DNA of 64,000 bases. Origin: Eutreptiella sp. 'Long Island Sound 2002'. Its lineage: Eukaryota; Protista; Euglenida. Below, in pieces: positions 19,197-63,727 of this stretch. The notes under the pieces are model-generated. The model searched no databases and was not told the DNA's origin. It worked only from the letters and a program-made list of their open reading frames with translations. Both the position numbers and the translations under genes were made by a program. The stretch is taken from positions 25,792,001 to 25,856,000 of the forward strand of contig OZ038379.1 of the NCBI GenBank assembly GCA_964036045.1, read 5' to 3'. The stretch's first letter is position 1, and every line of letters begins with the position of its first letter.

Positions 19197-19335
19197 GTGC
19201 AGCCAACAGAAACTACAGCAGCCAGCAGTAGTTCCAGCTCTAGAAGCAGCAGCAGCTCCAGCAGCAACAGCAACAGTCCTGCACAGAACAGCAGTGCTGC
19301 CTAGCAGCAGCAGCAGTAGCAATAGCAGCAGCAAG
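19197..19335. repeat. Imperfect (CAG)n-rich tract
   Basis: Runs of agcagcagc interrupted by variants. Confidence 0.8.
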
Positions 19336-21655: not shown

Positions 21656-21857
21656 GGAGTGGAAGACGATGCCACTGAGGCTGGTGGCTGCACGGTTCTC
21701 AGAGAACACTGAAACGCTGTGCCTTCAGAGCGCAGATGACGTGCTGACACTTTGCCAGCACCAAGTGATACAGACCCACGACCTCAAGTCATCCCCCGGG
21801 GCCCAAGGAATCTTCACGCTACTGAAGCAGTGGGAGACTCAGATTCAGTACATGGAG
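21656..21857 (+). CDS. Dynein heavy chain exon (linker)
   Basis: cccag acceptor; (R)EWKTMPL..LKSSPGAQG..KQWETQIQYME; donor GTCTGT. Confidence 0.92.
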
Positions 21858-22975
21858 GTCTGTATGCGACGCCTGATGCGTTGTGTCTCCGGACATGCCC
21901 CAGGGCTGTGCTTGCGTCCGTCCCTGGGCCGATGCCCAATGCTTGTGCGACCGGTGCTTACGCTTGGGCCTGTGTACCGGTGCTTCTTCCCATGCCCAAA
22001 CACATGTCATGCGCATCCCTCTCCCTGTGTGTCTGGGGATGGCCTCTGTAGTGCCCAGATGTACGCAGGGTGCCCAGACAGCCAATACGCCATCACCCCC
22101 CCAACCCCGGCCTCCCTGTGTGACACGTGGTCCTCAACAGTCACCCACAACTGGTCATCCTTTGACAGTGGGCGTTCACGACCATGAAGGGGGGCACATG
22201 CACGGACTTGCGAGGACGAACGGCTGAAGCCATCCAGGGTGCAGACACTCAGTCAATCAGAATCGACCATCCCCCCCCCACCCCCCACCCCACCGTCGCG
22301 TCACACAACTCCTCCTGCACAAGCGCTCTGGGGGGCCAGGAGGGCGCGGACCCGATCTTGTGCACGCACTCCTCTCCTCCCCTTTGTACAGAGCCCCAGG
22401 CGGCAGAGCCTCAGCGCATGGGGTGCAGCACAGACTTGATGCAACAACCGGCGGCCTCCCCTTGCTACACGAGGACGAGGGCAGGGGGGGCGCAGCAAGC
22501 AGTGGGCACTCTGTTGGTGGTTGTGCAGCGGAACGGCGGAGGACAAAGTGGGCAGGTCAGGGCATGGGGTGATCACCAGGACAAAGCGGGGGGGGATGGG
22601 GGGGGCAGCCAAGGGACGATGGGGCCTCGAGGTGAGGCCAATGCAGCTGAAAGCGCATTCGCACCCGTGGGGCTGCCGCACCACCCCCGAAGGCCAGTTT
22701 ACTCCACATGTGTCCACGATGCAATGGTTATCTGAAGGTGCCCAGGCAGGCCCCGAGCCACTGTTGGCTGCTTCCACAGCCATAGTTTGGTTCATGAAAG
22801 TCTCACTGCTCATGTTGTGCCCATGATCCCCTGCCAATCCATGTCCAGAACCTTGGTCGAAGGGGTTCATTCTTGTGTCTAATGAGGCATTCCACATGCA
22901 TATGTTTGTTTGTGTTTGTGTACGAGCGCAAGACATGCAGTGCAGTGCAATGCAATGCCGTACAATGACAAAGTA

Positions 22976-27736: not shown

Positions 27737-27816
27737 ATCCAACTGAGCACCGCCTCTGTGCCACCTTTGCATAGTGCTTGGGCTGATTGACAGGTGCCAT
27801 GTCGGGCATTCTGCAG

Positions 27817-27968
27817 GTGCTGATACAGAAGTGGATGCATTTGCAGGAGCTTTGGACCTTCATCGGCCCGCTGCTGTACCAAGGGCAGCTGCCTGGGTAT
27901 GAGCCGCAGCTCAAGACAGTGCATAATTTCTGGAACTCGCTGACACATCTGGTGCACGACAAGGGCAG
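27817..27968 (+). CDS. Dynein heavy chain exon (linker)
   Basis: ctgcag acceptor; VLIQKWMHLQELWTFIGPLL..QLP (canonical WLxVQxxWxYLEPIF..QLP); donor GTGTGC, phase 2. Confidence 0.9.
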
Positions 27969-30899
27969 GTGTGCTCATGACTGACTGCACATCTGCACAT
28001 TGGCGCCCAATAGCATCCCTCAAAGAACAAGGGTAACAGCCCTCAACAATCCTGCACACTCTTCCACAACCGCCCACAACGTGCAGAAGGGAGAGTATTC
28101 CTCAGGGTTCACACCTGCATTCAGCTGCCCTTGGCTGCCCACAGAAACAGTGCAAAGGCCGGGGGGATGGAGCACTGCAGGACTGGTGATGATGTTCCAG
28201 GAAGCAATCAAATTCGGCCATGTTGTGTACAATGATGGAGGGCTCGCTGATCTGCAACATCATGTTTTTGTATTCCTCCAAGACACAGTCCAACAAACTG
28301 TCCTGTGGCATCCATTTCCCAGGAGGAGTACTCAGCACTACACACTACGGCCCGCTTTTGTCACTCCTTGTGGTGTGTGTAACCGGAATTCATTGACCCC
28401 ACGTGACTCATTTTGGCGAATTTCTTGAATGTTTATGTAGGGTTGGACCCCAAAATTGCCCCTCCCCCCATCCCTCTGGACCCCAAAAGAATACATTTTG
28501 GATTTTTTTGATGATTGAGCTGCTGACGCTGAAAAATATTTCAGCAGTTTGGGCCATATTTTCGGTGCAAACAGTGATTTTGCACTTTTTCACTCGGGCA
28601 ATGGCTCGCCCGTAGCCAGGGCTAGAGGCTGCAAATCATGTCCTTTTGCATCCCACCATGGGTGTGCTGTCGCGACATCCCCAATCCCACCCCCCTATGA
28701 GAGTTACCATGAGTCCCCCAAGCACGTCGTCTTACAAAAATGGGTGAATGCTGCATAAGCTGTATTATAAGTCATCCCACACTGCCAAAGTAAGCCACAC
28801 TCATTGGAGATCCAACAATGCTTTTTAGGGTCAAAACCGCAAGAATCCTGCAAGATTTGCAATTTCACCTCAAGAAATAGGGGGAGGGGTGACCATTTCT
28901 GACGCTCCCCCTCACCCCCCGTCCCCAAAGAGTGGGTTTTCACTAGGGCTGTCCTGACCAATAACTCATTGGGGGATGGTTTATCGGACAAAGTAAGGCT
29001 TCTATAGAAGAACAAGTGTACACATTTTGTACGTAGTTACTCAGTGAACCTCACAGTGGAGCAGTTTTAATGCAAAATGCCTGGTGGGGCACGGACTTAC
29101 CATGCCGAAAAAATCTCTGTGACGTTATTTCAAAAATACCTCCAAAACCTGAATATCACCTCGAAGAGAGGTTGTTAGATCCCTCCCCTGTTGGGGGTCA
29201 TTCACATGTCATACCCCAATGTATATGTAGCCCCTTGTACAATCATAATTTTGGGAGACAAAATTATCTCCCAATTAATCTTTCGATTTGACCCCTCCAA
29301 TCCCCCCCCCCCCCCCACTTGGGTACCACTTTTTGGGGGGGGTTCAAAACTTGTTTGGCTTACTGCTGCCACTGTGTGTTGATTCGGACCCTGGTCCCAC
29401 TCCACTTTTTTCTTCTACATGGAACCCGTAACCAATGATGGGGGTCCAGGGTGCTATCTCCACTTTTCCAAGATTGGCCCCCCTACGGGGCCCCGTGGGT
29501 GAGGCCTTGGGCGTTCTGAGGCTGACATGGGTTGGTTGACAAATCGCGATTTCTGGTTGACCTCCGACACCCCGGGGGACCCTTGGGATGTTGTTGGGTG
29601 ATCGTTTGGTGACAATGGGAGTAGATATAAACCCATGGGGAGCCATGTAGCACCAACTGGGCCCTCCTAGTGGTGCTTATTGGCCCCTGAAAGTGCTGTT
29701 TTGGCCTATTTGCACCGTTTTGGGCAAAATTTGGCCGGCCTATAGTGTATGGTTTTTCCACAGCAGTTTCAGCCTCCACATCACTTGTCTCTCTTCGAGG
29801 TGCCTTGCTGAAGGCAACAGAATGTTTTAACCCCCCCCCCCTTCCATGCCTCTGTCGGCCCAAATTTCAGCCACCACAAAGCGAGGGTGCAGGCCGTGGG
29901 CTGGTTCCCCTTGGGGACCAGGAAACTGGGGAGCAGACTTTTTGCTGCCCCTACCCTCCCCCCCCCAACAGCAATAGGGCGGGACCAAAAGCAGACCCCC
30001 CCCCCCCCAGCATGCCCTCGCACCCTCACTGCAGGCCGGCACATGGTGAACGAGGTCCCTCCCCTCGCGGAAAAGGGGCGGACGCTGAATGACGAGTTTG
30101 TCGGGATCTGGGACCCGCATGGTAACCCAGCAGGTGGTCCTCCTCTCCCAAACAAGTGAACACCATGGGCCAATGAACGGACAGGTAGACCCATCCACCA
30201 CTCAACCCCCCCAGCCTGCGCCCCCGACGGGAGGGGTGCACGGAGTCGGCGCCCTCAGGGCCTGAAAAGTGGAGGCAGTGAAGGGCTCACAGCTTGACCG
30301 CTGTGGGCATCCCTGGGGCGGCCTGCCCAGGGAACCTCCAGGTGTGCACTCGCCCCTCCAACCTCATCACAGACGCCTAGGCCAGCACAGCCCCGTGCAC
30401 TGCAGTGCAGTTGTGGGCGACCCCTGGAGGCCAGACAGCCACCTGCCGACCCCTGCCCCCCACCCCCCCCTGCCCTTGGAGGGGCCAGTCCGGTGGTGTG
30501 CCCTACGGGCCCCTAGGACTAACGGGGCAGCAGCGCCGCACCCGGGAACCTTCCCGGGCAGGTCCCAAGGCAGGGAAGCGCTCAGCGCGCCCTGGGACCC
30601 CTCCACCTGCCACCAGCGCCCCAGGCCGTGGGAGTGCGGGACCCAGCTAGTACAGCAGCGCCACCTGTGCCAACAGGCAGTCAAGGAGCGCGGGTCCCCC
30701 CCAGTCGTGCCCGGCGCACACCCGTCCCCGTGCGTACGCAGTCGTGGGACGGGCGGGCAGCGTGTCTCTGTGACCAGGAGGATGCGATGCCCTGGCCCAC
30801 TACTCCCCGGTGGGCTCAGCGTCAGGCTCCCATGGCCTGCCCCACCGGGCCTGGAGCACCAGGCCACACTTGCCCCCCACACGCAAGGCCCAGCCCCCG

Positions 30900-35063: not shown

Positions 35064-35352
35064 CTTCCTGGTGCTGGCGGATGATCTGCAGCTCGTGGGT
35101 CAGATCAACAAGGCCTGCAGGACATTGGAGACCGTATCTCGCTCTCTGGCCGCGATGGTGGACGACCGCCGGCAGACGTTCCCACGGCTGTACTTTTGCT
35201 CGGACTCGGAGGTCCACGCGTTGATGGGACAAGTGGGCCCCCGGGAGAGGCCCAGCATCGGGTTGCGTTTGTGCTTCCCTGGTCTTCATGATCTGGTGTA
35301 CGATGACGATGGCTGCATTGCTGGCGTCCTCCCGGACCCTGTGACAAAGCAG
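35064..35352 (+). CDS. Dynein heavy chain exon (linker, FPRFYF motif)
   Basis: tttccag acceptor, phase 2; LETVSRSLAAMVDDRRQTFPRLYFCSDSEV..LRLCFPGL; donor at 35353. Confidence 0.93.
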
Positions 35353-35700
35353 GTGGTCAGGCTGAGGGGACGCAATTTGTTTTGTTTTGTTTGTTGCAAC
35401 ATCGCTCTGCGCCAGCGGCCCCCGGTCACACCTGCTGGCGGTGATGACACAACTGCTGGCGGTTGCGAGTCCTAATTTTGTCAGTTATCCACCAACCGCT
35501 ACCCTTGACCAGTCAACCGCCGTCAGCCAACTGCTGTCAGTTAATCACCGTCGAGCACACCACGTTCTGCTGAAGCGCAGCAGCAATTTTGTTGTCCAGG
35601 ACAGCCCTGGGGCGTGCACCGGTCCGTGCGGTACTCCTGAGTGTGCACTGTGGACGTGCCTGCCATGCTCCTGCTCACTGCCGCGTCCTGCATGCCACAG

Positions 35701-35975
35701 GCATACCCACTGCATCAGCCGGTCAGTTTTCGTCCGGGGATGCCGCGCCGGAGGTCGGAAGCCAAGGCGAAGCCCAAAGGCAAGTTCAAGCGATCGAAGT
35801 CTGTGCACTGGATCCAACCGGAGCTGAGTTGGCTGCTGGGGCTCGAGACGGAGCTACGGCATACCGTTTTAATGAATTTGCAATCGGCGACTGCGGACGG
35901 CCGTCAGAGCTCCGACATGCGTCAGTGGGTTGCGAATTGGCCTGTGCAGATTGTACTTGTGGCACAGCACCTGAG
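35701..35975 (+). CDS. Dynein heavy chain exon (pre-AAA1)
   Basis: ccacag acceptor; WLLGLETELRHTV..QWVANWPVQIVLVAQHL matches WLxxLExxMRxTL..WxxxWPxQxVL; donor GTGTGG. Confidence 0.92.
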
Positions 35976-41642: not shown

Positions 41643-42744
41643 GCCTGACACTCAGGAGTGGCAGTGGCTGTTATCCCTGCGGTACTACTGGGAAGCGGGG
41701 GACGCTGGTGCGCAACACGTCCGCGTGGCGCAGCTCAACGTCAGCCTCAGCTACGGCCTGGAGTTCCTAGGGCAGGCCCCCCGCCTCATCCCCGCCCCGG
41801 CCCTCGCCCACTGCATCGCTGCGGTGCTCGGGGCGTGTGCAGACCACGGCCTTGGCGTTCTCGTCTCCCCGGGCGGCTCCGGCCGCACAGCCCTTGTGAC
41901 GGACGTCGCGGCTGCCACGGGTCGCGCGTGCGTCGTAGCGCAGTGCCGTCCAGAGCTGGACCCGGCGGGCCTTGCCTGCACGCTCATGGGCATTGCGAGC
42001 ACCGGTTTCTGGGGATGCCTTGCAGACCTGCACCTCCTGCCCACGCGCACCTTGGGGCAGCTCGCGCTCTATATGGACACGCTCCAAGCGGCCGCCGTGG
42101 CTGTTACCGGGGTGCAGGCCGCCTCGGATGCAGCATCCCCCGTGCACATCGGCAGCATTGAGATGCCCCTTCGGAGCATTGTGCCGGACTTCGCGATTTT
42201 CGGGACTGTGCCAGCGCGTGATGCGTTACTGGCCCCCGGGACTGCCCGCGGACGGGCGCTGCAGGCGCTGCGCGGCTGCCTCTGCCCCGTGCACCTCGCC
42301 ATCCCCCCCGCAGAGTACGTCGCGCAGGTGCTGCTGGTGGGGCTGGGCTGCGAGGTCGAGGCCGCGCGCGCGGCTTCACAGACGCTCGTTGGCGCACTAC
42401 ACGCGCTTGAAGCCGCGCTGTCGCTGCAGCCGCACTACGGGTTTGGGGTCGCGCGGGTGCGCGCGCTGCTGACGAGTCCCGCCGCGCGCGCCTCCCGAGC
42501 GCAGCTGCACAAAGACGTGACGGGATTTTTGAAGGCGGCGCTTGAGCGGGCGTTCGTGCCGGCGCTGGTGCCACGGGACGTGCCAGTGTTCCATCACGTC
42601 CTTGCGGATGCGCTAAAGGTGGAGGACCTCTCGGACGCACTACTGTCGGCGGCGGCGGCGGCGCTTGCGGCCGGGGACCGGCGCCGGTCGGTGCGCGCGG
42701 AGAACGAGTTGATGGGGACCATCGCGGAGTCGTGCACGCAGCAG
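41643..42744 (+). CDS. Dynein heavy chain exon, AAA1 module (degenerate motifs)
   Basis: WQWLLSLRYYW..YGLEFLGQAPRLIPAP..SPGGSGRT..CVVAQC..WGCLADLHLL..LSLQPHYGFGVARVRALL; donor GTGTGC. Confidence 0.95.
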
Positions 42745-44214
42745 GTGTGCGACGGATGTGTGCGGCGATGGCCCGCCCATTGCCCGTTTCCTACCCGGAG
42801 CCGATGTTTACCACTTGGGGACACAAGCACAACAAGAAAGAGGGGGGGGATATGGGGCGTCTTTCATTTCTCAGCCTTTCCTGCGCTAGGCTCTGGCAGC
42901 AAAATGGGCATGGACCCTCTATATCCCCCTCATACTTGTACCAGAGCTGTCAAGGAAGGGATTTTACAATGCGCAATAATAATACACTGCCCGACGCGTA
43001 ATAGCTTAGGACATGTGATATTACTACGCCCAAACCGACACATAATAAAACCAACGCGTAATAAAATCCCCAACGCGTAATGAAACCGACGCCTCCTTTT
43101 CGAAATTTTTGGTGCATTGTGAAAAAATATCGTCACTTAGGTGGGGGTATATGTATACTTTTTGAAATCTGCTTCAAAAGGGCTTCAAAACGAGCCTTTG
43201 GCAGCACCCCAGGTGGTCCCACCCCTGTGATATTGGTGACCAATAGGTGCAATTGTCACACAACATGCACTGCACATTTCTGCAACGTTTGTTCCGGATC
43301 GTCATCGTCATCGGTGTTTGCAAGGGCAGGGACCCCATTAGGGCAGACGCCACCATGTTTGTTCACGGGGACATATTTTTTCAGATCCTGCCAATCCTAC
43401 GGCTTTTACTTGCTTTACTGGCACCCAGCTTGTGTTCAAAGGCATTCCCCACAATCCATCGGTTGTAAGGTCCACATTCAGTTGCTTGGTCAACCTGACC
43501 TTGCAACACGGGATGGTCTCTTGGTAGCCATTTGCGAGATACCTTGACCCATTCCTCACTCTCGGAACGTGCCCTTTTCCGAACTAAAGGTTTCCGAGGT
43601 GCATTAGGGGAGGCAACAACACATTGCAAGTTTTGTAGGTAGGCATGGCACAAGACTGTGACAAAACGGGGGAGCAAGCAGATCATGCACTGTCCAAAAC
43701 GGACCAAATTTCTCAAACATATCGAAAGTTCAGCATGCAGACCCAGGATGTTCCAAATCGCCATTTTCAAGGGTTTTCCGAATATATGCCACATACCCCT
43801 ATGTACAGGACACCCAGTCGGCACAAATGAGTCAACAATGACAGGGACTCTGAAAAACGCTCGGAGTTGGCACATTTGTCGTGTCCCGGAGAGATATATG
43901 TGTTCATGTATGGTTGTGTGGTTGTATGTATGCATGTATGTTTGTATATAGGTATGTCCGTATGTATTCCCAAAAAACGTTCCGCTCATGATGGGCATGG
44001 CGGTGTGTAGTCTGAAGACGCGGTCTGCCCCAAGCGGACGTGGTTTGCTAATTGTAGACACTGCCGGCATGTTGTAGACGCAAAGTGCCAATATTCGGCC
44101 CCCTTCCCCAAGAAAAGGTCCGCTGACGGCGTTTAGCCGTGCACACTGGCATGTCTCTCGAGCAAGTGGAGCGAGCATGGAGGACAAATACAGGATGATA
44201 TTTGAGATGGTCGC

Positions 44215-44350
44215 TGCATGCATGAATGTATGTATGTATGGATGGATGGATGGATGGATGTATGGGCATATGTATTTATGTACGTATGTAACAATGATGT
44301 ATGGCGCGTATTAATAGTACTAGTAGTAGTAGTACTAGTAGTAGTTGTAG

Positions 44351-44398
<48 letters not shown>
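44215..44398. repeat. Compound microsatellite (ATGT/ATGG, TAG, CAG x about 11)
   Basis: Direct reading. Confidence 0.85.
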
Positions 44399-45461
44399 AC
44401 GCACAATAAATTTTTTACGTGTAATATTTTTACGTCTAAACCGACGCCCCAACTCGAAACTTGGTGCTTGTTTGACAGCTCTCACTCGTACACATCGCTC
44501 ATCCCTCCCCTTTTCATGTAGAGATTTCCTCATCACGGGCCCTCGTACAGAAATACTCACCACCACACTTCATGCACAACCCAACACCAGAACTAGCCTA
44601 GGCCCCCAACACCTGCCGCTCTCTGCCCTCCCCTCCCCTTCTCATCCTCAATACATCCCCCCTGATTTCCAGCCCAAAACCCCCTCAGTCATGGTTGTAC
44701 AGCCGAGCTCTGCCACACAACTGCTGAAGGGTGAATTTGTCGGAAGCATTACATCCAGCAGTTGGGGGGCAGGGGAGGCAGCGGAGAGCGGAGCTCGGAG
44801 CGGGGAAAGGGGGGCGATTCAAAGGGTGCCAGGGAGCAGGGGTGGGCAGGGGCTTTAGGCAGAGGATTGACCGACTGCGAGAGCCCAGGGTGCAGGGGAC
44901 GCAAGGCTGCCGGGTCCTGCAGGGTGGGGTATGTGCCCTCTGCTGCTCTTCCGCTTCATCTCATTTCTTTTATCAATGCACAGACGTTCTTCGAAGCTGC
45001 GTTGCATCCGTCTCCTACCCCCCGAAAACAAAAGAATATACGCTAGACGGCCTGGCTGGTACCTCAATTTCCCTGTGGGCACCGCGTGCGTGCATGTGTG
45101 CGTGAGTTTGGTTTTCGGGGATAGCAGTGGTGGTCCAGTGCCTGGGCACGTGCAGGCTCCGCATATCCAGTGGTGACTTGTTACCTGCTCCCCCATTTCG
45201 GGCCCGTGGCTCCAGGTGTCAGTCAGGGACTCCCGTGGTATAACCAGTGTCCCCTACTGGGACTCGACCCTGGGGTCTCGGAATGCAGGGCACGCACACT
45301 GACCGCTGTACCACGGGACCCACGGTGTGTCTCAACTGCTTGGTCGGTGGGTCCAATTCGGCGAAGGCACGTTGAAGGTGCCTTTGGTGCGTATGGGGAG
45401 GCACGAGCGGTGCCGCACGTCCCCTGGGCTATTGCAGCCCTTTCCGCATTGTCGTCCGTAG

Positions 45462-45768
45462 GCGTTACAAGCCGCGCCGCAGTTCATCAATAAGTGTCTG
45501 CAGCTGCACGAGGCCCTCAGTAGTACCCGCGCCGTTGTGATCTTTGGGGAGGCAGCCACGGGAAAGAGCAGCATCGTGCGTGCCCTCTGGCAGGCGATGC
45601 AGCCGCATCGCAAGTTGGAGGCGGGCAAGCGGCGGCCGAGCGCGCTCCCCCGGTCTCCGTCGGAAAAGGACATCGTGCTGCATCGCATTTTCCCCGGGGC
45701 CGTCTCCATCCAAGAGCTCATTGGCGCGATGTCAGTGGATAATGTGTGGGAGGACGGCCTGTTTCCGG
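45462..45768 (+). CDS. Dynein heavy chain exon, AAA2 P-loop
   Basis: ccgtag acceptor; FINKCLQLHEALSSTRAVVIFGEAATGKS..IFPGAVSIQELIG..WEDGLF; donor GTGTGT. Confidence 0.95.
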
Positions 45769-46409
45769 GTGTGTGCCACCGTGTGGGTGTGTGGCAGGGG
45801 TACGGGGGGGGGGGGAGGTTGCATGGTTGTGTACCGCAGTGCCATGTCTTTGGTGTGCCCTGTTAAGTTGATCCACGTCATTTGCGTGCATGCGTGCGTG
45901 CGTGCGTCTTAGTGGCTAGTTCGGGACGTATTGCTTCAATTGTGTGTGTGTGTGTGTGCGCGCGCGCCCGTGCGTGCGTGTGGGAAGAAAAAGCGGTTGT
46001 GTGTTTGTGGGTGAGAGTGCCACGGCAGTCCCACTGCTCACCTGTTGCAGCATGCTGCCCCCGTCCCAGGGCGTCCACCCTCGTGCGGTTTCACATGCCG
46101 TCCACCCAATGACCGTCAACCTCGGAAGGTGCTCCCCACGGCAAATGACGTGGGAAGGGCCTCCGGATCACGGAAGTTTACGCATCAGTGGCGCACTGCA
46201 ATTCCAATCGGACATGATGGGGGGGGGGGGTACGTGTCAATGAGGTGCAGTGGGGGGGGGCGCCTTAAGCGCAGTGCGCGCGCAGTGCAACTATTTGGGC
46301 GTCTGGCCGTACTAGAGACCCATACTTTGAGATACTAGGGGCCCCTAGGGGCATCATGGTGACCCCTAGCGGAGGTTTTGACTTCTGATTTTGTCCCCCT
46401 TTGTTTGGG

Positions 46410-46715
46410 GATCCTGTCTTGTTCAATCCTAAATACGCCGGGTGCGTATATAAAGTTACGGTTGCCGTTGACAGCCTTGGCAACATCGTTTGGATTTGTC
46501 CGTTGGCCCCCGGGACATCGGCGGATGTTCTCATTTGGGATCGCGAAGGACCGAAAAGGAGCAAGGGGCATTATATGGATTATGAGATTGGCTCCATGGA
46601 TGGTGCATACAAGGGGCGCCTCCATGTGGCATGGCCATTTATCGGTCAAAAGACGTTGACCGAGCGGCAAAAGGAGTACAATGATGTTCATGGTTTCTAT
46701 AGGGCACGTATTGAG
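46410..46715 (+). pseudogene. PIF/Harbinger (DDE_Tnp_4, IS5-like) transposase fragment, truncated
   Basis: KVTVAVDSLGNIVWICPLAPGTSADVLIW..DGAYKG..PFIG..LTERQKEYNDVH..RARIE is the characteristic DDE_Tnp_4 core. It is cut off after RARIE and lacks the N-terminus. Confidence 0.85.
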
Positions 46716-47338
46716 CTGTCCATGGCTTTTCCAGTTGTGCATGATGTGTGTTATGTGAAGGGAAGACAGTTTGCAACTTTCTTGAGCTGGGGCAGTTTGG
46801 GTCACCTACTTCTAAGGGCGTTTCCAAGGGGTGTGCCTGGGGGCTCTTCGGGGGGAACATAGTCTAAAAGTAGCGTGCAGTGCAAGGATTCCCCCTGGGG
46901 CAAGGGGTGTTCGTGGCCGGGGTGCACCGGAGGGCATGTGGCACGGATGTGCAATCTGTGGCGACGGGGCCTGGGGCCAGAGTGTGGGGTACTCCCATAC
47001 CAGAGCGGCCCCAGGCAGCATGACTTCGTCGGTGCATGATCCGGGGCTGTGTGCGTAGAGCGCCCGGCAGACCCCCTCCGCCCACGGGGGGGGCGACTCC
47101 GCGGGTCCTAGGACGCCAACTACCCCCCCCCCCCCCCTAGGGGCCTTCGGCCAACAGTTAGTCGCCAAAGGTGTCGCCCTCAGACGTCCATGGGCGCCTA
47201 AGGCGCCCGATGCTCCATGAACACCAAAGGTGCCCTAAGGAAAATTTTGTCCAATTTGCACCCCAACACTATCCTTAAACCCAACCTTGACTCTAATACC
47301 CACCCCCAACCCTCAGCCTACTCCTATCCCTACACCTA

Positions 47339-48479
47339 ATCAAGACTGAATATTGGGACCGAGCTGGTGGGGGAGGGAACATCAGCTATGACTGGTGAGG
47401 GACATCAAGAATGATTCACACATTGATGGCTCTTGACAAAGTGAAATCAGCTTGCAAGTGAACCCCATCACCACAAGGCCCACTTTCAAGGCTTTTGTTG
47501 GACTTCTGGGGGGCCAAAATGCCCCCAAATGGGCTCAAAATGGGCTCATTTCACCCGTTTGTGCACCCCAAATGGTCTAGGATGAGGTTTGGAAAAATGT
47601 GTTTTTGACCCATTTTTGACCCATTTTTGGTCCCAAAATGGGCTCAAAATGGGCTCATTTCACCCGTTTGTGCACCCCAAATGGTCTAGGATGAGTTTTG
47701 GAAAAATGTGTTTTTGACCCATTTTTGACCCATTTTTGGTCCCAAAACAGCCCAATTTCAAGGCATTTTGGGATTTTCGGAGGACCAAAATGGGCCACCA
47801 CAAGCTCAAAACGGTCCAAAAACACTTGTTTTAGCGTCGCACATGGTCTGGGATCATTTTTAAGAAAAGTCATCTTTTTGCCTTTACTGGACCCTGTTGA
47901 CCCATTTGGGCACCCACCTGTTTGGGCTTGAGCTTGTAGCTTGCCGCGGCCTAGTGGGGCTAGGTATTGGGGTCTAGGCGTCCGTTTGGGCAATTTTGAG
48001 GGGTGGAAACCACAAAAAGTGGGGGGTTGCGGGTGGACTAGGTGCCCTCGGAATCGCATTTTGAGCCATGTAGCCAAAGATATGCCCTATTCTTGGTTTG
48101 TGGCTGTCGGCATTTGGAGCTTCTGCGGGCTTTTTGGGCCGTTTCCGGGACATATCATGGAGTGAGAGGGCCGCAAAGGGCTCGTTGACACGGGGAAGTC
48201 AAGCCGCGCGTGGAGTGTACCCACCGTTCCCCTTCATTTGGCCGTTTTGAATGGGTTCCAGGGCTTTTTTGGCCCAAAAATGGCTGTTTTTGGCCCTAAA
48301 CTGCAGTTTTTGAAACTGAGGTCCGCCACTTGCGAATCCCGTTCCCGGCCGCCACCGTTGAGTTTCTTGCTCAAACTTTGTGTGATTGTACTTCACACCC
48401 ATAGGTATCATCCACCAAAATTTCACCTGAATCTGAAGCACCACGACGGAGTTGTGATTTTTAGCCATTTCGCGCGTGC

Positions 48480-48514
<35 letters not shown>

Positions 48515-49656
48515 GCTGCTAAACCTGGTAGGTCCACCCTAGACACTAAAAAGGGTTATAAAACCAAGACTGGTTCCACCAGCTCGGTGACCCTAACCCT
48601 AACCCTAATCAAGACTGAATATTGGGACCGAGCTGGTGGGGGAGGGAACATCACCTATGACTGGTGAGGGACATCAAGAATGATTCACACATTGATGGCC
48701 ATTGAGAAAGTGAAATCAGCTTGCAAGTGAACCCCATCACCACAAGGCCCACTTTCAAGGCTTTTTGGACATCTGAGGGGCCAAAATGCCCCAAAATGGG
48801 CTCAAAATGGGCTCATAATGGGCTCATTTCACCCGTTTGTGCACCCCAAATGGTCTAGGATGATTTTTGGAAAAATGCGTTTTTGACCCATTTTTGACCC
48901 ATTTTAGGTCCCAAAACAGCCCATTTTCAAGGCATTTTGGGATTTTCGGAGGACCAAAATGGGCCACCACAAGCTCAAAACGGTCCAAAAACACTCGTTT
49001 TACCTTGGCACATGGTATAGGATCATTTTTGAGAAAAGTCATCTTTTTGCCCCTACTGGACCCTGTTGACCCATTTGGGCACCCACCTGTTTGGGCTTGA
49101 GCTTGTAGCTTGCCGCAGCCTAGTGGGCCTAGGTATGGGGGTCTAGGCGTCCGTCTGGGCAATTTTGAGGGATGGAAACCACAAAAAGTGGGGGGTTGCG
49201 GGTGGAGTAGGTGCCCTCGGAATCGCATTTTGAGCCATGTAGCCAAAGATATGGCGTGTTCTTGGTTTGTGGCTGTCGGCATTTGGAGGTTCTGGGGGCC
49301 TTTTTGGGCCGTTTCCGGGATGTATCATGGAGTTAGAGGGCCGCAAAGAGCTCGTTGACACGGGGAAGTCAAGCCGCACGTGGGATGTGCCCACCGCTTC
49401 CCTTCGTTTGGCCGTTTTGAATGTGTTCGAGGGCTGTTTGGGCCCAAAAATGACTGTTTTTGGCCCTAAACTGCAGTTTTTGAAACTGAGGTCCGCCACT
49501 TGCGAATCCCGTTCCCGGCCGCCACCGTTGAGTTTCTTGCTCAAACTTTGTGTGATTGTACTTCACACCCATAGGTATCATCCATCAAAATTTCATCCGA
49601 ATGTGAAGCACCACGACGGAGTTCTGATTTTGGCCCATTTCGCGCGTGCTGCTTGC

Positions 49657-49687
<31 letters not shown>

Positions 49688-49757
49688 AAACCTGGTAGGT
49701 CCACCCTAGACACTAAAAAGGGTTATAAAACCAAGACTGGTTCCACCAGCTCGGTGA
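47339..49757 (+). mobile_element. Head-to-tail dimer of a ~1.15-1.25-kb non-coding element
   Basis: Unit 1 (47339-48590) and unit 2 (48609-49757) align throughout; unit 1 has an extra internal ~110-bp duplication; 13-bp subterminal inverted motif ACCGAGCTGGTGG/CCACCAGCTCGGT. Confidence 0.9.
48591..48608. repeat. Interstitial telomeric repeat (CCCTAA)3
   Basis: Exact at the dimer junction; variant copies at 49758-49785 and a degenerate tract at about 47270-47338. Confidence 0.8.
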
Positions 49758-50529
49758 CCCTAACCCTAGCCCTAACCCTAGCCCTGGCTGGCAAATCACC
49801 TCACCTGGACCCCCCCCCCCCCACCCTCCCGGAGCCCCCCCCCATCGCCCCTCCTAGACCCCCCCCCTCCAATGCCCCCCCCCCCCCCCCCCCAAGGGGC
49901 CTCCGGCCAACAGTTAGTTGGGGGGGTAGTTGGCATCCAGAACCGAGGGGTCGCCCCCCCCGGGCCTCCGCCCCTTGTGCGACAGGGCCATGGCCCCCCC
50001 GGACACGCAAAAAGAAACGCAAAAAGAAACTGTGCCACAGTCATGCGTCCGGTAATTGGGGCTCCTGAGGCTCTTGGGGGCGTTGTAGGCCAGTCAGGGT
50101 CCGGTCCACACGCCGTACTGTCTGTCTGCCGGCCGGACAAGTCTGCCCTCACTTACAGATGGTTCGTGCAGTCGTACCGGGTGTATAGACCTGCTTCCCC
50201 TCACCCCCTGGCCCCCGCAGTGGAAGCGTCGCCATGTAGTGCCCCGGGCTGCAGGCTCAAAGACGTTTGGGTCCGTAGGCGGGAGTGGGACGAAAAGCAC
50301 ATCGGCAGGAGTGTACTGCGTTGCAGGAGGCGGAGGGGCCTTGGGGGGGGGGGGGGGGGCTCGAGAGTATTGACGGCCCTTCTCCAAGATGCGGTGCACG
50401 GGTCCTGCAGCCATGCCGACCGCAGCCGGAGATACCCGCTGCTGGGCTCGTTCAGGGCTGGGCGCCTCGCTGAGCTGAGCTGGTCTGGGGCGGGCTGCGT
50501 TCCCTGGTCTTGTGCTGCACATTGCCCAG

Positions 50530-52295
50530 GTCTTGTCCGCAAGGTCCATCCCCAAGTGTCCACTTGGATCCACTTCGACGGGCCGCTGGACCCGCACTGG
50601 GCCTGGGCCTGCACCCCCACCGCCATGGCCCCCATGCTGCCCCTGCTCTCCGGCGAGCAGCTCGCCCTCCCCCACACCCTCCGGTTCGTCATGGAGACCG
50701 ACAGCCTTGCCGACGCGGACCCCGGCCTCCTCTCCAAGGCCGCCTGCGTATACCTGCCCCCCACCCTCGCTGACCCCTCGGTGCTGGTGGAGGCCTGGCT
50801 GGCCCGCACCTTCCACTCTGACAGCCCCATCGCGTCCCTGCGGCTTTCACTCGGGCCGGTCGTGAGCCGGCTGCTGCCCCCCGTCATCGACTGGGTACTG
50901 GCGCGCCGGCACCTGCCGCCCAAGCCCAACCCCCGCGCCCTGACCGCCGAGTGCCTGCGGCTCCTGGGGCTTGTGCTGCAGTCGCTGATGGCGCAGCATC
51001 CGGCATTCCGCGCGCTGTCCGACGCGCACGCGGTCTACAGCGGCGGCGGCATGCCCGCGGGGCAGGACCCCGAGGAGGGGACGGAGCGGGGGGAGTGCCT
51101 CGAGCGCTCCGCCGTGTTCGCGATCGTGTGGGCCTGCGGCGGGCGGCTGCCGGTGTCCGAGCGCCCGCACTTCGACAAGTTCCTGCGGACGGAGATGCGC
51201 CCGGGCGCCGCGAAACCGGCCCCGGCCACTTTTGGGGACGCCGTTGCCACCAGCGGCCCGCCCTCCCTCCGGACCCCCGCCACCAGCGGCCCGGCGTCGC
51301 TGCGCGAGCCCGCGTCGGTCCGGTACCTGGCGTGTCCTGAGTCGGTGCGGAGCCCCGTCCGCGCCGCCCCTGGCGGGCGCGTCACGTACAATTTCCGAAC
51401 GGCGCTGCCGCCCGCAGCCCCTGGGGCGGAGACCGTGTTCCACTACACGCTCGACCCCCTGACCGGGGACTGGGCCCAGTGGTCGCCGGGTGCGGGCGGC
51501 GCGCCGGGGCACCTGCCGGGCAGCCCCCGCCGCCCCGTGCCCTGCGGCTCCCCCCGCGGCGTGCCCGGGGCCCTGTTCCCGCCCTCCGAAGGCCGCGTGG
51601 CCCTCAGCCAGGCCCAGGCCGCGCAGTTCGCCTGCCTCTTCTCCGCCGCCAAGTACCCGGTCCTCGTCTTAGGCCCCGCCGGGGGCGGTCCCGGCGACGT
51701 CCTCGGCGCCGTTGCCGCGTCCGCGGCGGGGCACGCGCACCGCGTCGCGCTGGCGCGGGGGTGCGATGCGCAGTGGCTGCGGCGGGCCCTTGCCGCGTGC
51801 CTCGCACGCTCGCAGGGAGACGCGGCGGCACGGCCGGTGACGTTCCTGCTGGACGACGTGCACGTGCTGGCCCCGAATGCGCGCGGCAGCGGGGCGGCCC
51901 CCTGGACCCCAGCCTCGGAGTACCTCCGGCAGTGGCTCGACACACGGGACTGGCCCGCAAAGACTCCCCCACACGGCTCCGCTGCCATCGCAGACGCCGC
52001 GTTGGTCGCGGCGGCGGCGGTTGCAGGGCCGGGTCAGGCCGGGCAGCAGCTACCGCCGCGCCTACTGCGGCACTGCCATGTGCTGCATGTTCCCCCGATG
52101 CCTGAGGATGAGGTCAAGGCGTTGTTGGCACAGAAGTTGGAGGGGGGCCCGGCGCCGGAGCTGATGAGTGTCGTGGACGCTAGCGTGCAGTTCTTGAGGT
52201 CGGTGAAGGCGCTGTGCCCGGCGACCCCCACGGCCCCGCACTACGCTTTCGGGCTTCGGACGTTGCTGCAGGTGTTTGAGCGGCTGCAGCGGCAG
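50530..52295 (+). CDS. Dynein heavy chain exon, AAA2-AAA3
   Basis: gcccag acceptor, phase 1; WIHFDGPLDPHW..LSGEQL..RFVMETDSL..; FAIVWACGG; PVLVLGPAG; FLLDDVH; LRQWLD; LPPRLLRH; PHYAFGLR; donor GTATGT. Confidence 0.95.
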
Positions 52296-54493: not shown

Positions 54494-54871
54494 GTGCACA
54501 CTGACCTCCGGAGCCGGGCCGGTGCTGCCACGGGGACCATTGGACTCCGGACCGCTGATCACTCGTCCCCGGCGCAGTTCCTGCGGACGTGGTGGCATGA
54601 GACCGTCGGCGCTTTCTGTGACGCGCTCGTGACGGCGGAGGAGCGGAAGGCGGTGGTTGGTGCCCTGGCGCAGGCGGTGGGGCGTACGCTGCCGGTTGGC
54701 AGCCGCGAGGCACTGGGTCCGGCGCTGGAGGACGAAGAGGGGGGGCGGCGTTTCTTCGGGCCGTTTGCCGCATCGACCGGGTACCACGTCCTGAAGGACT
54801 TGGACGAGGCGAAGGAGCAGGTGCGGGTCCTCGTGGAGGGCTACAACTGCGCGCAGTCACTGCAGTCGGAG
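54494..54871 (+). CDS. Dynein heavy chain exon (AAA3 small subdomain)
   Basis: ttgcag acceptor; FLRTWWHETVGAFCDALVTAEER matches LxRLWxHExxRVFxDRLVxxEDR; donor GTATGT. Confidence 0.92.
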
Positions 54872-56077
54872 GTATGTGCCTCAAGATTTCAAATGTTGAT
54901 GTTTCGCATGTTTTCCTGTCCCCAGCGTGCGCACGCCGGTGGCTATGGCCGCACATGCACCGTTGCGCACGTCTCGGCTTCCTTACTGTGTGCGTCTGCG
55001 TGCATGGGCATGTACGGGTGTGTACATGGACATGGACAACAGAGGCATGGACCGCTTGGGATCGGCAGATATGGATCCCTCGTACGGTTGCACACAACGA
55101 GGCTTGATGCCTTTGTATGACCTTCACCACGAGTCTGGTTGTGTCACGGTGTCTCCGGCCGAGAATCGTGACAGCGCCGCCTTTGCGTGAGTCCGGCCTC
55201 GCCACGAGGGATACCATGAGATTCGGATCCGTCGCCCGGCGTGTTCTCTCCGGCGAAAATTCGTTGGCTCGTTGGCAACTCTTTCAAGAGATTTGCGGCG
55301 CTCGGGGGAGTCTGCTCGTCGTCCAATCGCCATTGCCCTCCCATGCGCACGCACAGGGGGAAGGTCCATTCCAGTGGGCTTCGGCGCTTAGACCAGGGGG
55401 CAGCCTGCACCCGACATTTTGCCACAGTTTCCGTGCTGAATGTGGACCCCCCGCCGTGCCCAATCGGCGACAACTTGAGCAGAAATGGGCTTTGCCGGGA
55501 GGCGGAGCATTGTCATGAGCAGAACTCTAACATGACCCAGCCGCCCTCTCCCCACTACACTGGGCTCATATCCGTGCAATCAGCTTCGCACTGACAAAAG
55601 TGCGGTCAGGAAAGCAGCCTCATGTCACCCACCCCATGACATCCACAAGCGCCTCTCCCCGTACCCCGTGCGCAGACAGCGGCAATGCGCGATGAACGCG
55701 AAGTGATTTTCCCGCGAGTATTGGGATCATGGATTTTGCGGTCCCATGTTTTGGTTGGGATAGACATGGGTTGGGCAATGGGTTGCAGGGCAGGACGGGG
55801 ATTGGGTTGTGTTGCTGTGCATTTGTGAGGTGTGACGGGGTGTGGGAGGCTGCCGCCATCTCCACATGGGCCATGCCGGGCACAGGGTCTGGGGGATGTG
55901 TTCCACAGGGTCGTGTGTGAACACCGGCCCTGTCCAGACAACACTGGGTGCTGCTTCCGAAACTTTTGGGGCCCTTGGCATTGGGTGCGCAAAGGGGGTG
56001 GGGGTGGGGGTGGGAGGCAGCGAACTACGTCACGTCAGCCTCGGGGGCAGGATGTCAGGTCTTCATGCGTTCTTCAG

Positions 56078-56521
56078 GAGCTGCACCCGGCAGTCGACCT
56101 CCACCTGCTGGACCGCTTGTGCAAGGCCCTCCAGGCGCTGCACCTCTTTCGGGGCCACCTGCTTCTGATTGACAGCAGCACCACCGCGTCGCTCGGCATC
56201 GCGCGCCTCACCGCCCATTTCATGGAGGCGGAGCTCTTCACATGGGCTCTGCCGCAGTCGCCGATGACCCCCGACGCTGTGGAGGTGTGGCGGGGCTGGA
56301 TGTGGGACGTGGTGCAGGCGGCGGTGGTGCAGGACATCAGCTGCGTCTTGGCAGTGGACATGGGAATGCTGGCCGCCCTGGGGCCTGCACCTTCGCACCT
56401 CCTGGGGCTTCTGCTGGATGCGGCCGCGGCTCCCTCGGCTGTGTACCCGCTCCTGGACAGCTTCGCGGCCGCTCAGGGCTACGAGGCGCTCCTGAACAAG
56501 CTCGACGCCATGGTGACGAAG
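56078..56521 (+). CDS. Dynein heavy chain exon, AAA4 (degenerate P-loop)
   Basis: ttcttcag acceptor; LLDRLCKALQALHLFRGHLLLI..IARLTAHF matches IxHxxRIxRxLxxPRGHxLLVG..LxRLAAF; donor GTCTGT. Confidence 0.88.
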
Positions 56522-62351: not shown

Positions 62352-62382
62352 GTGTGTGTCTGTGTGCCAGCGCGTGTGTTGT

Positions 62383-62578: not shown

Positions 62579-62628
<50 letters not shown>
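62383..62628. repeat. (CTCCCT)n followed by (CT)n and (GT)24
   Basis: Direct reading. Confidence 0.95.
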
Positions 62629-62630
<2 letters not shown>

Positions 62631-63351: not shown

Positions 63352-63727
63352 GCCCAAGACGAGGCAGACGAGGCAGACGAGGCGCTGCACAAAGCCCTGA
63401 AGAGCCTGAAGAAGGCTCAGCTGCAGCCGCTAAAGGCCCTGTCCTCTGCCGCACCCGTCGCCCATGGGACGAAGCTGGTGCTCGAGGCATATTGTTTGGC
63501 GCAGGGGCTGGCGTCACCGCAGGCTGTGGCCTGCAACGAGGTCGACGTGGGCGCCATCGTGGCCAAGGCCGCGGCCGACCCGGGGCCGTTCATGGCATCG
63601 CTCGCGGACATTGGAACGGTGCCGGAGGACGTGGCGGCAGCACTGGAGGAGCGTGTGGCATCGCCTGACTTCCGCAGCCCCGGCCGCGGGAAGGCTCTGC
63701 ACGTCGTTGCGCAGTACGTCATGGCAG
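63352..63727 (+). CDS. Dynein heavy chain exon, end of CC1 and microtubule-binding domain
   Basis: gtgcag acceptor; DEALHKALKSLKKAQLQPLKAL..KLVLEAYCL..DPGPFMASL..SPDF matches ALxxALxxLxKxDIxE..VKLVMEAVC..FLxSL..PDF; donor GTGTGC. Confidence 0.9.

What the first reader, a model, noticed from the sequence alone, without database searches (positions are those of the whole stretch)
41643..50738. Candidate catalytically dead dynein: the primary AAA1 ATPase site is dismantled in an intact ORF
In dyneins AAA1 is the essential hydrolysis site. Four elements are altered here. Walker A GPAGTGKT reads SPGGSGRT (41866-41889; Lys to Arg). Walker B CFDEFNR reads CLADLHL (about 42016-42036; the acidic DE pair is lost). 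Sensor I FITMNPGY reads FGTVPARD. The trans-acting AAA2 arginine finger SRCG reads SKAA (50733-50744). Yet about 2,350 codons over 19 exons remain open and in phase, which argues for selection on the protein. It may be a structural or regulatory pseudo-motor, analogous to pseudokinases and possibly to the divergent animal DNHD1 class. Loss of activity is inferred from motifs only.
Basis: partly seen in the sequence, partly recalled or inferred. Interest (0 to 1): 0.82.

Follow-up and report, generated by a model that had tools for sequence, protein, structure and literature searches.

The report
Dynein heavy chain without working ATPase sites
A giant, intron-rich dynein motor gene of a euglenid-like protist keeps its whole architecture and protein core but has lost every residue needed to burn ATP at its main engine site, so it is most likely a non-motile "pseudo-motor" like those recently described in animals, here of independent origin.

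Summary
At the stated coordinates, AAA1 reads SPGGSGRT at Walker A, CLADLHL at Walker B and FGTVPA plus an 8-residue insert at sensor I. The AAA2 arginine finger reads SKAA. I add a displaced sensor II (GLRA to GVAR) and lost Walker A lysines in AAA3 and AAA4. Only AAA2, the structural nucleotide site, keeps GKS. Among the 150 best database matches, ours is the only one without the Walker A lysine.

The gene is real and complete. Collinear in-frame segments run from the tail to Dynein_C over more than 90 kb, without stops. GC1/2/3 is 0.71/0.49/0.82. It keeps 94% of the family's hydrophobic columns, despite a terminal branch of 1.7-4 substitutions per site. Near-invariant residues are lost preferentially in AAA1. 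One metatranscriptome holds two perfect exon contigs; one covers Walker A and one starts at a splice junction.

No orthologue exists in 1.8 billion representatives, so dN/dS cannot be computed. A tree and pairwise scores place it among single-headed inner-arm dyneins (DNAH7/3/12/1-like), not outer-arm alpha. It is therefore a functional analogue of animal DNAHX and DNHD1, not an orthologue of DNAHX. Orthology to DNHD1 was not tested.

Verdict: probable non-motile dynein, a new variant of a known kind. Expression evidence is thin and function is inferred.

The parts
1716..1928 (+). Linker/tail exon segment (profile positions 777-847); the gene continues upstream of the window
   Evidence: Custom DHC profile hit, E 2.8e-5. 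Upstream collinear hits at profile 561-776 lie on the same contig.
16507..21884 (+). Three linker exon segments (16507-16710, 18109-18288, 21654-21884; profile 844-1027)
   Evidence: Collinear profile hits, E 7e-5 to 8e-8. GC3 0.70-0.76 against GC2 0.32-0.40.
27811..27969 (+). Weak linker segment (profile 1017-1073)
   Evidence: Profile hit, E 0.05. It is collinear and has GC3 0.79.
35074..35973 (+). Two linker (DHC_N2) exon segments: 35074-35328 and 35827-35973
   Evidence: Profile hits, E 4e-10 and 1e-4. Pfam DHC_N2 is recorded for the called ORF there.
41643..42744 (+). AAA1 exon (end of linker, AAA1 large and small domains)
   Evidence: Pfam AAA_6, 98.6 bits. Profile hit 145.8 bits. AG acceptor before 41643 and GT donor after 42744. 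A perfect RNA contig lies on 41827-42025.
41866..41889 (+). AAA1 Walker A SPGGSGRT (canonical GPAGTGKT): first Gly to Ser, Lys to Arg
   Evidence: The RNA contig from run X1 covers it with no difference.
42016..42036 (+). AAA1 Walker B CLADLHL (canonical CFDEFNR): Asp to Ala, catalytic Glu to Asp
42199..42255 (+). AAA1 sensor I region FGTVPARDALLAPGTARGR (canonical FITMNPGYAGR): Asn and the gating Tyr are lost and 8 residues are inserted
   Evidence: Both possible alignments lose the Asn and the Tyr.
42439..42459 (+). AAA1 sensor II GFGVARV (canonical DFGLRAV): Arg displaced by one position
   Evidence: 144/147 best hits have Arg in the column where this protein has Ala. Calling this column sensor II rests on my knowledge of the family and on the DNAHX preprint.
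42745..45461 (+). Intron (GT..AG, phase 0), with dispersed repeats at about 43100-44200
   Evidence: Sequence. The RNA contig's aligned part starts at 45460, and two more letters of the contig do not fit the genome, as expected at a splice junction.
45462..45768 (+). AAA2 N-terminal exon with an intact Walker A GEAATGKS (45546-45569)
   Evidence: Profile hit 53 bits. A perfect RNA contig lies on 45460-45662. Motif coordinates.
45769..50529 (+). Intron (GT..AG, phase 1; inferred) holding a Harbinger-type DDE relic (46389-46859) and a 1.17-kb tandem duplication (47323-49775)
   Evidence: The splice sites keep the frame and restore a canonical-looking ...EDGLFPGLVRK...WIHFDG join. DDE_Tnp_4, E 1e-4. 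Repeats. No RNA evidence for this junction.
50530..52289 (+). Exon with the AAA2 C-terminal half (Walker B WIHFDGPLD at 50565-50591), the AAA lid and AAA3
   Evidence: Profile hit 159.8 bits in one frame across 480 profile positions. Pfam Dynein_AAA_lid and AAA_7.
50733..50744 (+). AAA2 arginine finger for the AAA1 site: SKAA (canonical SRCG), Arg to Lys
51672..51695 (+). AAA3 Walker A GPAGGGPG (canonical GPTGTGKT): Lys and Thr lost
54542..54904 (+). AAA3 lid / AAA4 start segment (profile 2210-2315)
   Evidence: Profile hit, E 3e-8
56108..56350 (+). AAA4 segment, with the Walker A position reading LLLIDSSTTASLG (56159-56197): no P-loop
   Evidence: Weak profile hit (E 0.08-0.23), collinear, GC3 0.91
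63352..63540 (+). Possible end of stalk coiled coil 1 and start of the microtubule-binding domain (profile 2663-2716)
   Evidence: Weak collinear hit only. Pfam finds no PF12777 here.

Best explanation
This is an expressed, selectively maintained dynein heavy chain gene that cannot run the dynein ATPase cycle. It spans more than 90 kb and its introns are loaded with repeats. It descends from a single-headed inner-arm axonemal dynein (DNAH7/3/12/1-like) and diverged extremely fast in a euglenid-like lineage.

Shown: AAA1 has lost the Walker A Lys, the Walker B Asp and Glu, the sensor I Asn and Tyr, the sensor II Arg, and the trans-acting AAA2 Arg finger. AAA3 and AAA4 have lost their P-loops. 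AAA2, the site that in canonical dyneins holds a non-exchanging structural nucleotide, keeps its Walker A and Walker B. The linker, the six-module ring and the C-terminal domain are kept, and so is the hydrophobic core.

Inferred: the ring folds, binds nucleotide at most structurally, and is fixed in one conformation. The protein would then act as a static or regulatory element. It could be a passive strut or brake occupying an inner-arm site in the flagellum. Alternatively, like sea-urchin DNAHX, it could be a partner that holds other dyneins inactive for transport.
For: Motifs. In one search ours is the only one of the 150 best matches without the Walker A Lys.

Gene integrity: collinear, frame-consistent profile hits run from profile position 561 to 4011 of 4016. 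Pfam finds DHC_N2, AAA_6, Dynein_AAA_lid, AAA_7, AAA_9 and Dynein_C, and a stop codon follows about 17 codons after the end of the profile. There is no stop in 1,777 aligned codons. Shuffles leave the two large exons open in 0.0009 and 0.00065 of trials.

Coding signature: GC1/GC2/GC3 is 0.71/0.49/0.82, and GC3 exceeds GC2 in all 13 segments.

Constraint: 254 of 270 columns that are hydrophobic in canonical dyneins stay hydrophobic, against a background of 48%. Replacements are more conservative than shuffled ones (z 6.8). This holds despite a terminal branch of 1.7 (LG) to 4.0 (C20) substitutions per site.

Differential release of constraint: columns at least 95% conserved are kept at 32/65 in AAA1 against 37/48 elsewhere (Fisher p 0.003). 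Against only the continuously aligned AAA2-AAA3 region the figure is 24/32 (p 0.018). The Lys of the AAA2 P-loop is kept although Lys has fallen to 2.2% of residues.

RNA: metatranscriptome run X1 has perfect contigs on 41827-42025 (covering Walker A) and 45460-45662 (starting at the acceptor), and none on unique intron sequence.

Origin: in the C20 tree the gene sits inside a 23-row clade with SH-aLRT 98, labelled DNAH7/3/12/1-like. The same clade gives the best pairwise scores and the best solved-structure matches.

Precedent: DNAHX and DNHD1 (bioRxiv 10.1101/2025.01.18.633724).
Against: No orthologue or close paralogue exists in 1.84 billion representatives or 5.8 billion clusters, so there is no dN/dS and no proof of conservation between species.

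RNA support is two or three short contigs in one environmental run. The tool warns that DNA can be present in RNA libraries. The other RNA-like runs matched only intronic repeats.

The extreme Ala/Gly/Pro/Arg-rich composition shows strong GC-driven drift, which also fits weak constraint.

The AAA4 core, the stalk and the microtubule-binding domain are not recognised by Pfam.

Alignment to a profile favours hydrophobic-to-hydrophobic matches, so the 94% figure is somewhat inflated. The short linker hits are ascertained by their conservation.

Loss of ATPase activity is inferred from motifs only.
Confidence: 0.6

Rival explanations
1. A 'ghost gene' on its way to becoming a pseudogene. On this reading it is a duplicated inner-arm dynein gene that lost its function and drifts under weak or no selection. 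It would still be open only because the inactivation is recent, or because a truncated heavy chain would be harmful.
For: No orthologue is found anywhere. The branch is extremely long and the composition is GC-driven. The introns are huge and filled with transposons. RNA evidence is minimal. The same was long said of DNHD1 (PMC8754002).
Against: There are 1.7-4 substitutions per site without a single frameshift or stop across about 1,900 aligned codons in 15 or more exons, and the stop sits at the canonical C-terminus. Codon periodicity is strong. 94% of the hydrophobic columns are kept. Invariant residues are lost unevenly, in AAA1 but not in the linker, AAA2 or AAA3. The RNA contig is spliced. 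A very recent loss of function after a long selected history cannot be excluded.
Confidence: 0.2
2. It is still an active ATPase or motor. AAA1 might hydrolyse ATP with non-canonical residues (Arg for Lys, Asp for Glu, Lys finger), or another module might have taken over.
For: The substitutions are partly conservative: Lys to Arg, Glu to Asp, Arg to Lys, with the Walker A Thr kept. AAA2 keeps both Walker A and Walker B.
Against: Five separate elements of the same pocket are changed together, including the Mg-binding Asp (to Ala) and the sensor I Asn. From my knowledge of the family, Lys-to-Arg and Glu-to-Asp changes abolish hydrolysis in AAA+ proteins, and canonical AAA2 lacks a catalytic Glu and does not turn over. 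AAA3 and AAA4 have no P-loop.
Confidence: 0.07
3. It is an artefact: an assembly error, a mis-alignment of motifs, or an alternative canonical AAA1 exon hidden in the introns.
For: The assembly does differ from the window at three homopolymer positions.
Against: Those differences lie in poly-C runs outside the exons. The exons are identical in both versions, and the RNA contig matches Walker A exactly. The flanking Trp, Cys and Gly anchors fix the alignment. A profile scan of all six frames finds only one AAA1 region.
Confidence: 0.03

Closest known systems
DNAHX (sea-urchin sperm non-motile dynein heavy chain; bioRxiv 10.1101/2025.01.18.633724)
   Same: Both are full-length dynein heavy chains whose AAA1 motifs are not conserved (Walker A, sensor I including the gating Tyr, sensor II). 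Both are interpreted as non-motile structural or regulatory dyneins. Both carry extra insertions in the motor.
   Different: DNAHX derives from the outer-arm alpha chain, is reported only in animals and stated to be absent in protists, keeps its Walker A Lys and Walker B, and holds ATP in AAA1. The gene here groups with single-headed inner-arm dyneins. It has lost the Walker A Lys, both Walker B acidic residues and the Arg finger, and it also lacks the AAA3 and AAA4 P-loops.
DNHD1 (animal 'orphan' dynein heavy chain domain 1)
   Same: Both are very divergent heavy chains. DNHD1's AAA1 lacks the catalytic Walker B residues according to the DNAHX preprint. It was long considered a ghost gene (PMC8754002) but is now linked to flagellar assembly.
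   Different: No DNHD1-named protein was among the 150 best matches, and the matches with an altered Walker B score no better than canonical dyneins. Orthology could not be tested directly, because no DNHD1 sequence was at hand.
Canonical single-headed inner-arm dyneins (DNAH7/DNAH3/DNAH12/DNAH1; Chlamydomonas DHC2; trypanosomatid IDAa heavy chain)
   Same: These give the best solved-structure matches, the best pairwise scores and the tree position. The domain order is the same, from linker to Dynein_C.
   Different: Canonical members share about 900 bits over 800 residues with each other. This gene reaches about 83 bits over its 352-residue AAA1 query and about 25% identity overall. They all keep the AAA1 catalytic motifs; this one keeps none.

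Membership tests
Dynein heavy chain superfamily | AAA1 module recognised by Pfam AAA_6 above the gathering score | tested here: met
   98.6 bits against a cut-off of 25.2
Dynein heavy chain superfamily | Collinear linker, six AAA modules and C-terminal domain in one gene | tested here: met
   Profile hits run in order from position 561 to 4011 of 4016. Pfam finds DHC_N2, AAA_6, Dynein_AAA_lid, AAA_7, AAA_9 and Dynein_C.
Dynein heavy chain superfamily | Catalytic AAA1 site (Walker A GKT, Walker B DE, sensor I Asn, sensor II Arg, AAA2 Arg finger) | tested here: not met
   All five elements are altered. It is therefore a member by descent and architecture, not by enzymology.
Dynein heavy chain superfamily | Coiled-coil stalk with microtubule-binding domain (Pfam PF12777) | tested here: inconclusive
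   Pfam finds nothing in the ORFs between AAA4 and AAA5. There is only a weak profile hit at 63352-63540, while the end of coiled coil 2 plus AAA5 are well matched.
Single-headed inner-arm dyneins (DNAH7/3/12/1-like) | Falls inside the clade in a phylogeny of the motor | tested here: met
   LG+C20 tree with the other long branches removed: inside a 23-row clade, SH-aLRT 98, labelled through P0105. Caveats: the branch is very long, a plain LG tree gave a long-branch artefact, and no AU test was run.
Single-headed inner-arm dyneins (DNAH7/3/12/1-like) | Located in the axoneme as an inner arm | not testable with these tools
   Needs proteomics, tagging or cryo-electron tomography
DNAHX subfamily | Descent from the outer-arm alpha heavy chain | tested here: not met
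   The tree clades outside the inner-arm group, which I take to be outer-arm and cytoplasmic types (only the cytoplasmic ones carry source names), score 123-214 bits against 262-330 for the inner-arm type. The tree places the gene elsewhere.
DNAHX subfamily | AAA4 and stalk insertions that lock the pre-powerstroke state | not tested
   The AAA4 and stalk exons could not be defined
DNHD1 family | Orthology to animal DNHD1 | not tested
   No DNHD1 sequence was available. Indirectly, none of the top 150 matches is named DNHD1 among the 30 that were looked up.
Non-motile (pseudo-enzyme) dynein heavy chains, as a functional class | Full-length heavy chain under selection with a disabled AAA1 site | tested here: met
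   Motifs. Integrity and constraint. Biochemical inactivity itself is not testable here.

The most novel reading that the evidence does not exclude
This would be an independent, protist origin of a pseudo-dynein. An inner-arm-type heavy chain has lost every hydrolytic P-loop (AAA1, AAA3, AAA4) and keeps only the structural AAA2 nucleotide site. It is maintained as a rigid ring that acts as a passive strut, brake or transport template in the euglenid flagellum. Other notes of this scan, unchecked by me, report further reused dynein rings in the same genome. If they hold, this gene may be part of a wider re-use of dynein motors as non-motor parts in euglenids.
Probability: 0.45. Interest if true: 0.65.

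Novelty: new variant of a known kind. Interest (0 to 1): 0.5.

Why it matters
Non-motile dynein heavy chains have only just been recognised, with DNAHX in 2025 and the re-evaluation of DNHD1. They are described as an animal innovation tied to sperm flagella. A protist example that arose from a different dynein class, and lost its catalytic sites far more completely, would show that turning a dynein into a pseudo-enzyme is a recurrent evolutionary route. It would also be a natural experiment: it shows which parts of the ring must be kept when no ATP is burnt (the AAA2 nucleotide site, the linker, the hydrophobic core). And it would offer a tractable system, since CRISPR works in Euglena gracilis (PMC9616515; I saw only its title and abstract), for asking what a dead dynein does in a flagellum.

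Tried and rejected
1. A word-indexed search of 5.8 billion protein clusters with the AAA1 exon found only the window's own ORF, P0001. The exhaustive representative search likewise gave no hit better than 1e-19 apart from self. Hence there are no orthologues and no dN/dS.

2. The RNA-like runs X2 and X5 and run X12 (library type not on record) matched only intronic repeats or, for X12, unique intron DNA. They say nothing on expression.

3. The first LG+G4 tree grouped the gene with other long branches from Bryopsis, Chilomastix and Diplonema. I rejected this as long-branch attraction, because pairwise scores to those proteins are among the lowest and the C20 tree without them moves the gene into the inner-arm clade.

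The organism's identity therefore rests on other notes and weak hints.

5. Pfam found nothing in the ten intronic ORFs scanned (both strands); the one intronic hit is the Harbinger-type DDE relic found earlier. Rfam found nothing in the 1.39-kb intronic array.

6. A look-up of a minus-strand ORF at 62210-63103 was not on record. A findings search for 'dynein heavy chain' by words gave nothing.

7. The ESM Atlas search only confirmed a dynein AAA1-type module.

8. I did not model the structure of the pocket. A model driven by an alignment of canonical dyneins would reproduce their fold whatever the truth, and no ligand modelling is available.

9. The hidden canonical AAA1 exon and the assembly-error readings were rejected.

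Full report
**What is there.** The window lies on a 1.97-Mb contig of ENA assembly ERZ25074135. The contig is identical to the window except for three bases in two poly-C runs outside the exons. The whole window sits inside one very large plus-strand gene.

I built a profile from 37 full-length dynein heavy chains. It finds 13 collinear, frame-consistent segments between 1716 and 63540, covering profile positions 777 to 2716, and nothing comparable on the minus strand. I then walked along the contig:
- Profile positions 561-776 lie upstream, at window-equivalent -8.1 to -0.8 kb.
- The end of the stalk plus AAA5 (Pfam AAA_9) lie at about 65.3-66.1 kb.
- An AAA6 segment lies at 79.1 kb.
- The C-terminal domain (Pfam Dynein_C, profile 3687-4011 of 4016) lies at 81.1-82.1 kb, with a stop about 17 codons later.

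The gene therefore spans more than 90 kb and is complete to the natural C-terminus.

**The stretch of the finding.** It consists of three exons and two introns.
- Exon A, 41643-42744, holds the end of the linker and AAA1.
- A GT..AG intron runs from 42745 to 45461.
- Exon B, 45462-45768, holds the AAA2 N-terminal half.
- An inferred GT..AG intron runs from 45769 to 50529. It holds a Harbinger-type transposase relic and a 1.17-kb duplication.
- Exon C starts at 50530 and holds the rest of AAA2, the lid and AAA3.

**Check of the observation.** All four readings are correct at the stated coordinates.
- Walker A is SPGGSGRT at 41866-41889.
- Walker B is CLADLHL at 42016-42036.
- Sensor I is FGTVPARD at 42199-42222.
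- The AAA2 finger is SKAA at 50733-50744.

Alignments to solved axonemal dyneins and to the profile place these opposite GPAGTGKT, CFDEFNR, FITMNPGYAGR and ATVSRCG. Conserved Trp, Cys and Gly anchors on both sides fix the register. In Walker B the Mg-binding Asp becomes Ala and the catalytic Glu becomes Asp. In sensor I the Asn and the gating Tyr are lost under either plausible alignment, and eight residues are inserted.

I found further changes. The sensor II Arg is displaced by one position (GLRA to GVAR), and TPLT becomes APAL. AAA3 Walker A reads GPAGGGPG. The AAA4 Walker A position has no P-loop at all.

AAA2 alone keeps Walker A (GEAATGKS) and Walker B (WIHFDGPLD). In canonical dyneins AAA2 holds a structural, non-hydrolysed nucleotide; that statement rests on my knowledge of the family.

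Among the 150 best matches out of 1.84 billion representatives, 149 keep the Walker A Lys, with ours the exception. 139 keep the DE pair, and 144 of 147 keep the sensor II Arg. Ten other proteins have an altered Walker B. They come from a flatworm, the green algae Cymbomonas and Bryopsis, a low-quality bird model, a dinoflagellate and metagenomes. All of them keep the Lys.

**Gene or pseudogene.** Five lines of evidence argue for a gene that diverged under selection.

1. Open frames. There is no stop and no frameshift in 1,777 aligned codons in the window. Single-frame alignments run across 300 and 480 profile positions. Shuffled versions of the two large exons stay open in only 0.0009 and 0.00065 of trials.
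2. Codon composition. Every one of the 13 segments has the composition of coding sequence. Overall GC1/GC2/GC3 is 0.71/0.49/0.82, against 0.46-0.64 in the flanks.
3. Branch length. The terminal branch is 1.7 substitutions per site under LG and 4.0 under LG+C20, several times the family median. Neutral decay of that depth would bring many frame-breaking indels; that expectation is my inference.
4. Retained core. 254 of 270 columns that are hydrophobic in at least 90% of canonical dyneins are still hydrophobic or Ala, against a background of 48%. Replacements are more conservative than shuffled ones (z = 6.8).
5. Uneven loss of invariant residues. Of the columns at least 95% conserved, AAA1 keeps 32 of 65. 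The linker keeps 11 of 12, AAA2 keeps 17 of 24, and the lid plus AAA3 keep 7 of 8. Fisher p is 0.003 against all other regions, and 0.018 against the continuously aligned AAA2-AAA3 region only. The AAA1 losses cluster in the nucleotide pocket. A decaying pseudogene would lose such residues evenly.

There are caveats. The short linker hits are ascertained by their conservation, and profile alignment favours hydrophobic matches. The protein has an extreme GC-driven composition (Ala 14%, Lys 2.2%), which shows weak resistance to mutational bias. Even so, the Lys of the AAA2 P-loop survived, and the Arg finger changed to Lys against that bias.

**Expression.** Of the runs that share words with the stretch, most matched only intronic repeats. 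One estuary metatranscriptome, X1, holds two perfect contigs on exons.
- One covers 41827-42025. It spans Walker A and the start of Walker B, so the Lys-to-Arg change is present in that library.
- The other covers 45460-45662. Its aligned part begins at the acceptor, and two further letters do not fit the genome, as expected for a splice from 42744 to 45462.

X1 has no contig on unique intron sequence. This is suggestive rather than conclusive. The evidence is short contigs in one environmental run, and DNA carry-over cannot be excluded.

**Relatives and class.** No orthologue or close paralogue exists. The only hit below 1e-30 is the window's own ORF, and the next best hits are 27-33% identical canonical dyneins.

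The best solved-structure matches are single-headed inner-arm heavy chains for both AAA1 and AAA2-AAA3. They include the trypanosomatid IDAa heavy chain, Chlamydomonas DHC2 and DNAH7. A concatenate of the aligned segments scores 262-330 bits against members of the DNAH7/3/12/1-like clade. It scores 123-147 bits against cytoplasmic dyneins and 135-214 bits against the tree clades I take to be outer-arm type (not named by any source), and the other long-branch proteins also score low.

A plain LG tree joined the gene to other long branches. With those removed and a site-heterogeneous model, it falls inside a 23-row clade of that inner-arm type, with SH-aLRT 98. The position within the clade is unresolved, and I ran no AU test.

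Other notes of this scan call the organism a marine euglenid. I did not verify that. The estuary hit and the kinetoplastid best matches are merely compatible with it.

**How it most likely works.** Shown: the architecture and core are kept, all hydrolytic sites are lost, and AAA2 is kept. Inferred: the ring folds around a structural nucleotide in AAA2, cannot cycle, and therefore sits in one conformation.

The protein would then serve one of two roles. It could be a passive element at an inner-arm position, acting as a strut, a brake or a spacer that shapes the waveform. Alternatively, as proposed for DNAHX, it could be a template that pairs with active single-headed dyneins to keep them inhibited during transport.

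Whether it still binds microtubules is open. Pfam does not recognise a stalk or a microtubule-binding domain, and only a weak profile match exists.

**Comparison with what is known.** Non-motile dynein heavy chains are a known kind. DNAHX of sea-urchin sperm has non-conserved AAA1 motifs and is locked pre-powerstroke. The same preprint notes that DNHD1 lacks the catalytic Walker B residues (10.1101/2025.01.18.633724). DNHD1 had been called a ghost gene (PMC8754002).

DNAHX derives from the outer-arm alpha chain and is reported to be absent from protists. The present gene derives from an inner-arm type, comes from a protist, and is more thoroughly disabled. It is an analogue of DNAHX, not an orthologue. 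Orthology to DNHD1 could not be tested, for want of a DNHD1 sequence. A full-text search for non-motile or inactive dyneins returned only the DNAHX preprint and one paper on dynein-2 loading into cilia that uses the phrase once in passing.

**Verdict.** I put about 0.6 on a selected, ATPase-dead heavy chain. I put 0.2 on a gene drifting toward pseudogene status, 0.07 on retained activity and 0.03 on an artefact. Novelty: a new variant of a known kind. Interest is moderate at 0.5. The case is surprising in its lineage and in the completeness of the loss, but it rests on one genome, thin RNA evidence and motif-based inference.

Noticed in passing
window 3352-14891: The 14.6-kb intron between the exon segments at 1928 and 16507 is largely filled by a higher-order tandem array. 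There are about nine units of about 1,392 bp, each containing 3-4 copies of a 99-bp sub-repeat (89-92% matches). Rfam finds no RNA family in two of the units.
   Followed up: partly
window 46100-47300 (ORF 46389-46859): A relic of a Harbinger-type transposase (Pfam DDE_Tnp_4, E 1e-4, below the gathering score) lies inside the AAA2 intron. Its sequence is highly repeated and is present at depths of hundreds to thousands in all four runs laid, with many variant copies and internal deletions.
   Followed up: partly
window 47323-49775: A 1.17-kb tandem duplication (copies 92-99% alike) lies in the same intron. Each copy ends in a short telomere-like CCCTAA run, at about 48590-48608 and 49757-49775.
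   Followed up: no
window 38702 and 49874: The window and the ENA record of the same contig differ only in the length of two poly-C runs (1 and 2 bases). These look like homopolymer errors of long-read assembly. The second changes which spurious upstream ORF a gene caller joins to the AAA2-AAA3 exon (939 against 863 residues).
   Followed up: yes
window 43100-43300 and 43700-44200: Dispersed repeats in the AAA1-AAA2 intron are covered by contigs of several runs, including RNA-like ones. The minus-strand 280-residue ORF at 43381-44223 overlaps them and has no Pfam family.
   Followed up: partly
proteins P0112 (Cymbomonas), P0117 (Bryopsis), P0070 (flatworm Cichlidogyrus), P0011/P0064/P0075 (metagenomes): About ten of the 150 best database matches are dynein heavy chains whose AAA1 Walker B lacks the DE pair (for example CLDDLDL, CLEEFWR, CFRYLDR) while keeping the Walker A lysine. 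AAA1-degenerate dyneins may be scattered more widely among eukaryotes than the literature says.
   Followed up: partly
window about 33085-33723 (L001 1360-1998): A called ORF here carries a weak SAP-domain hit. It lies inside the element that another note of this scan describes as a Harbinger-related family with a SAP ORF, in an intron of the same dynein gene.
   Followed up: no
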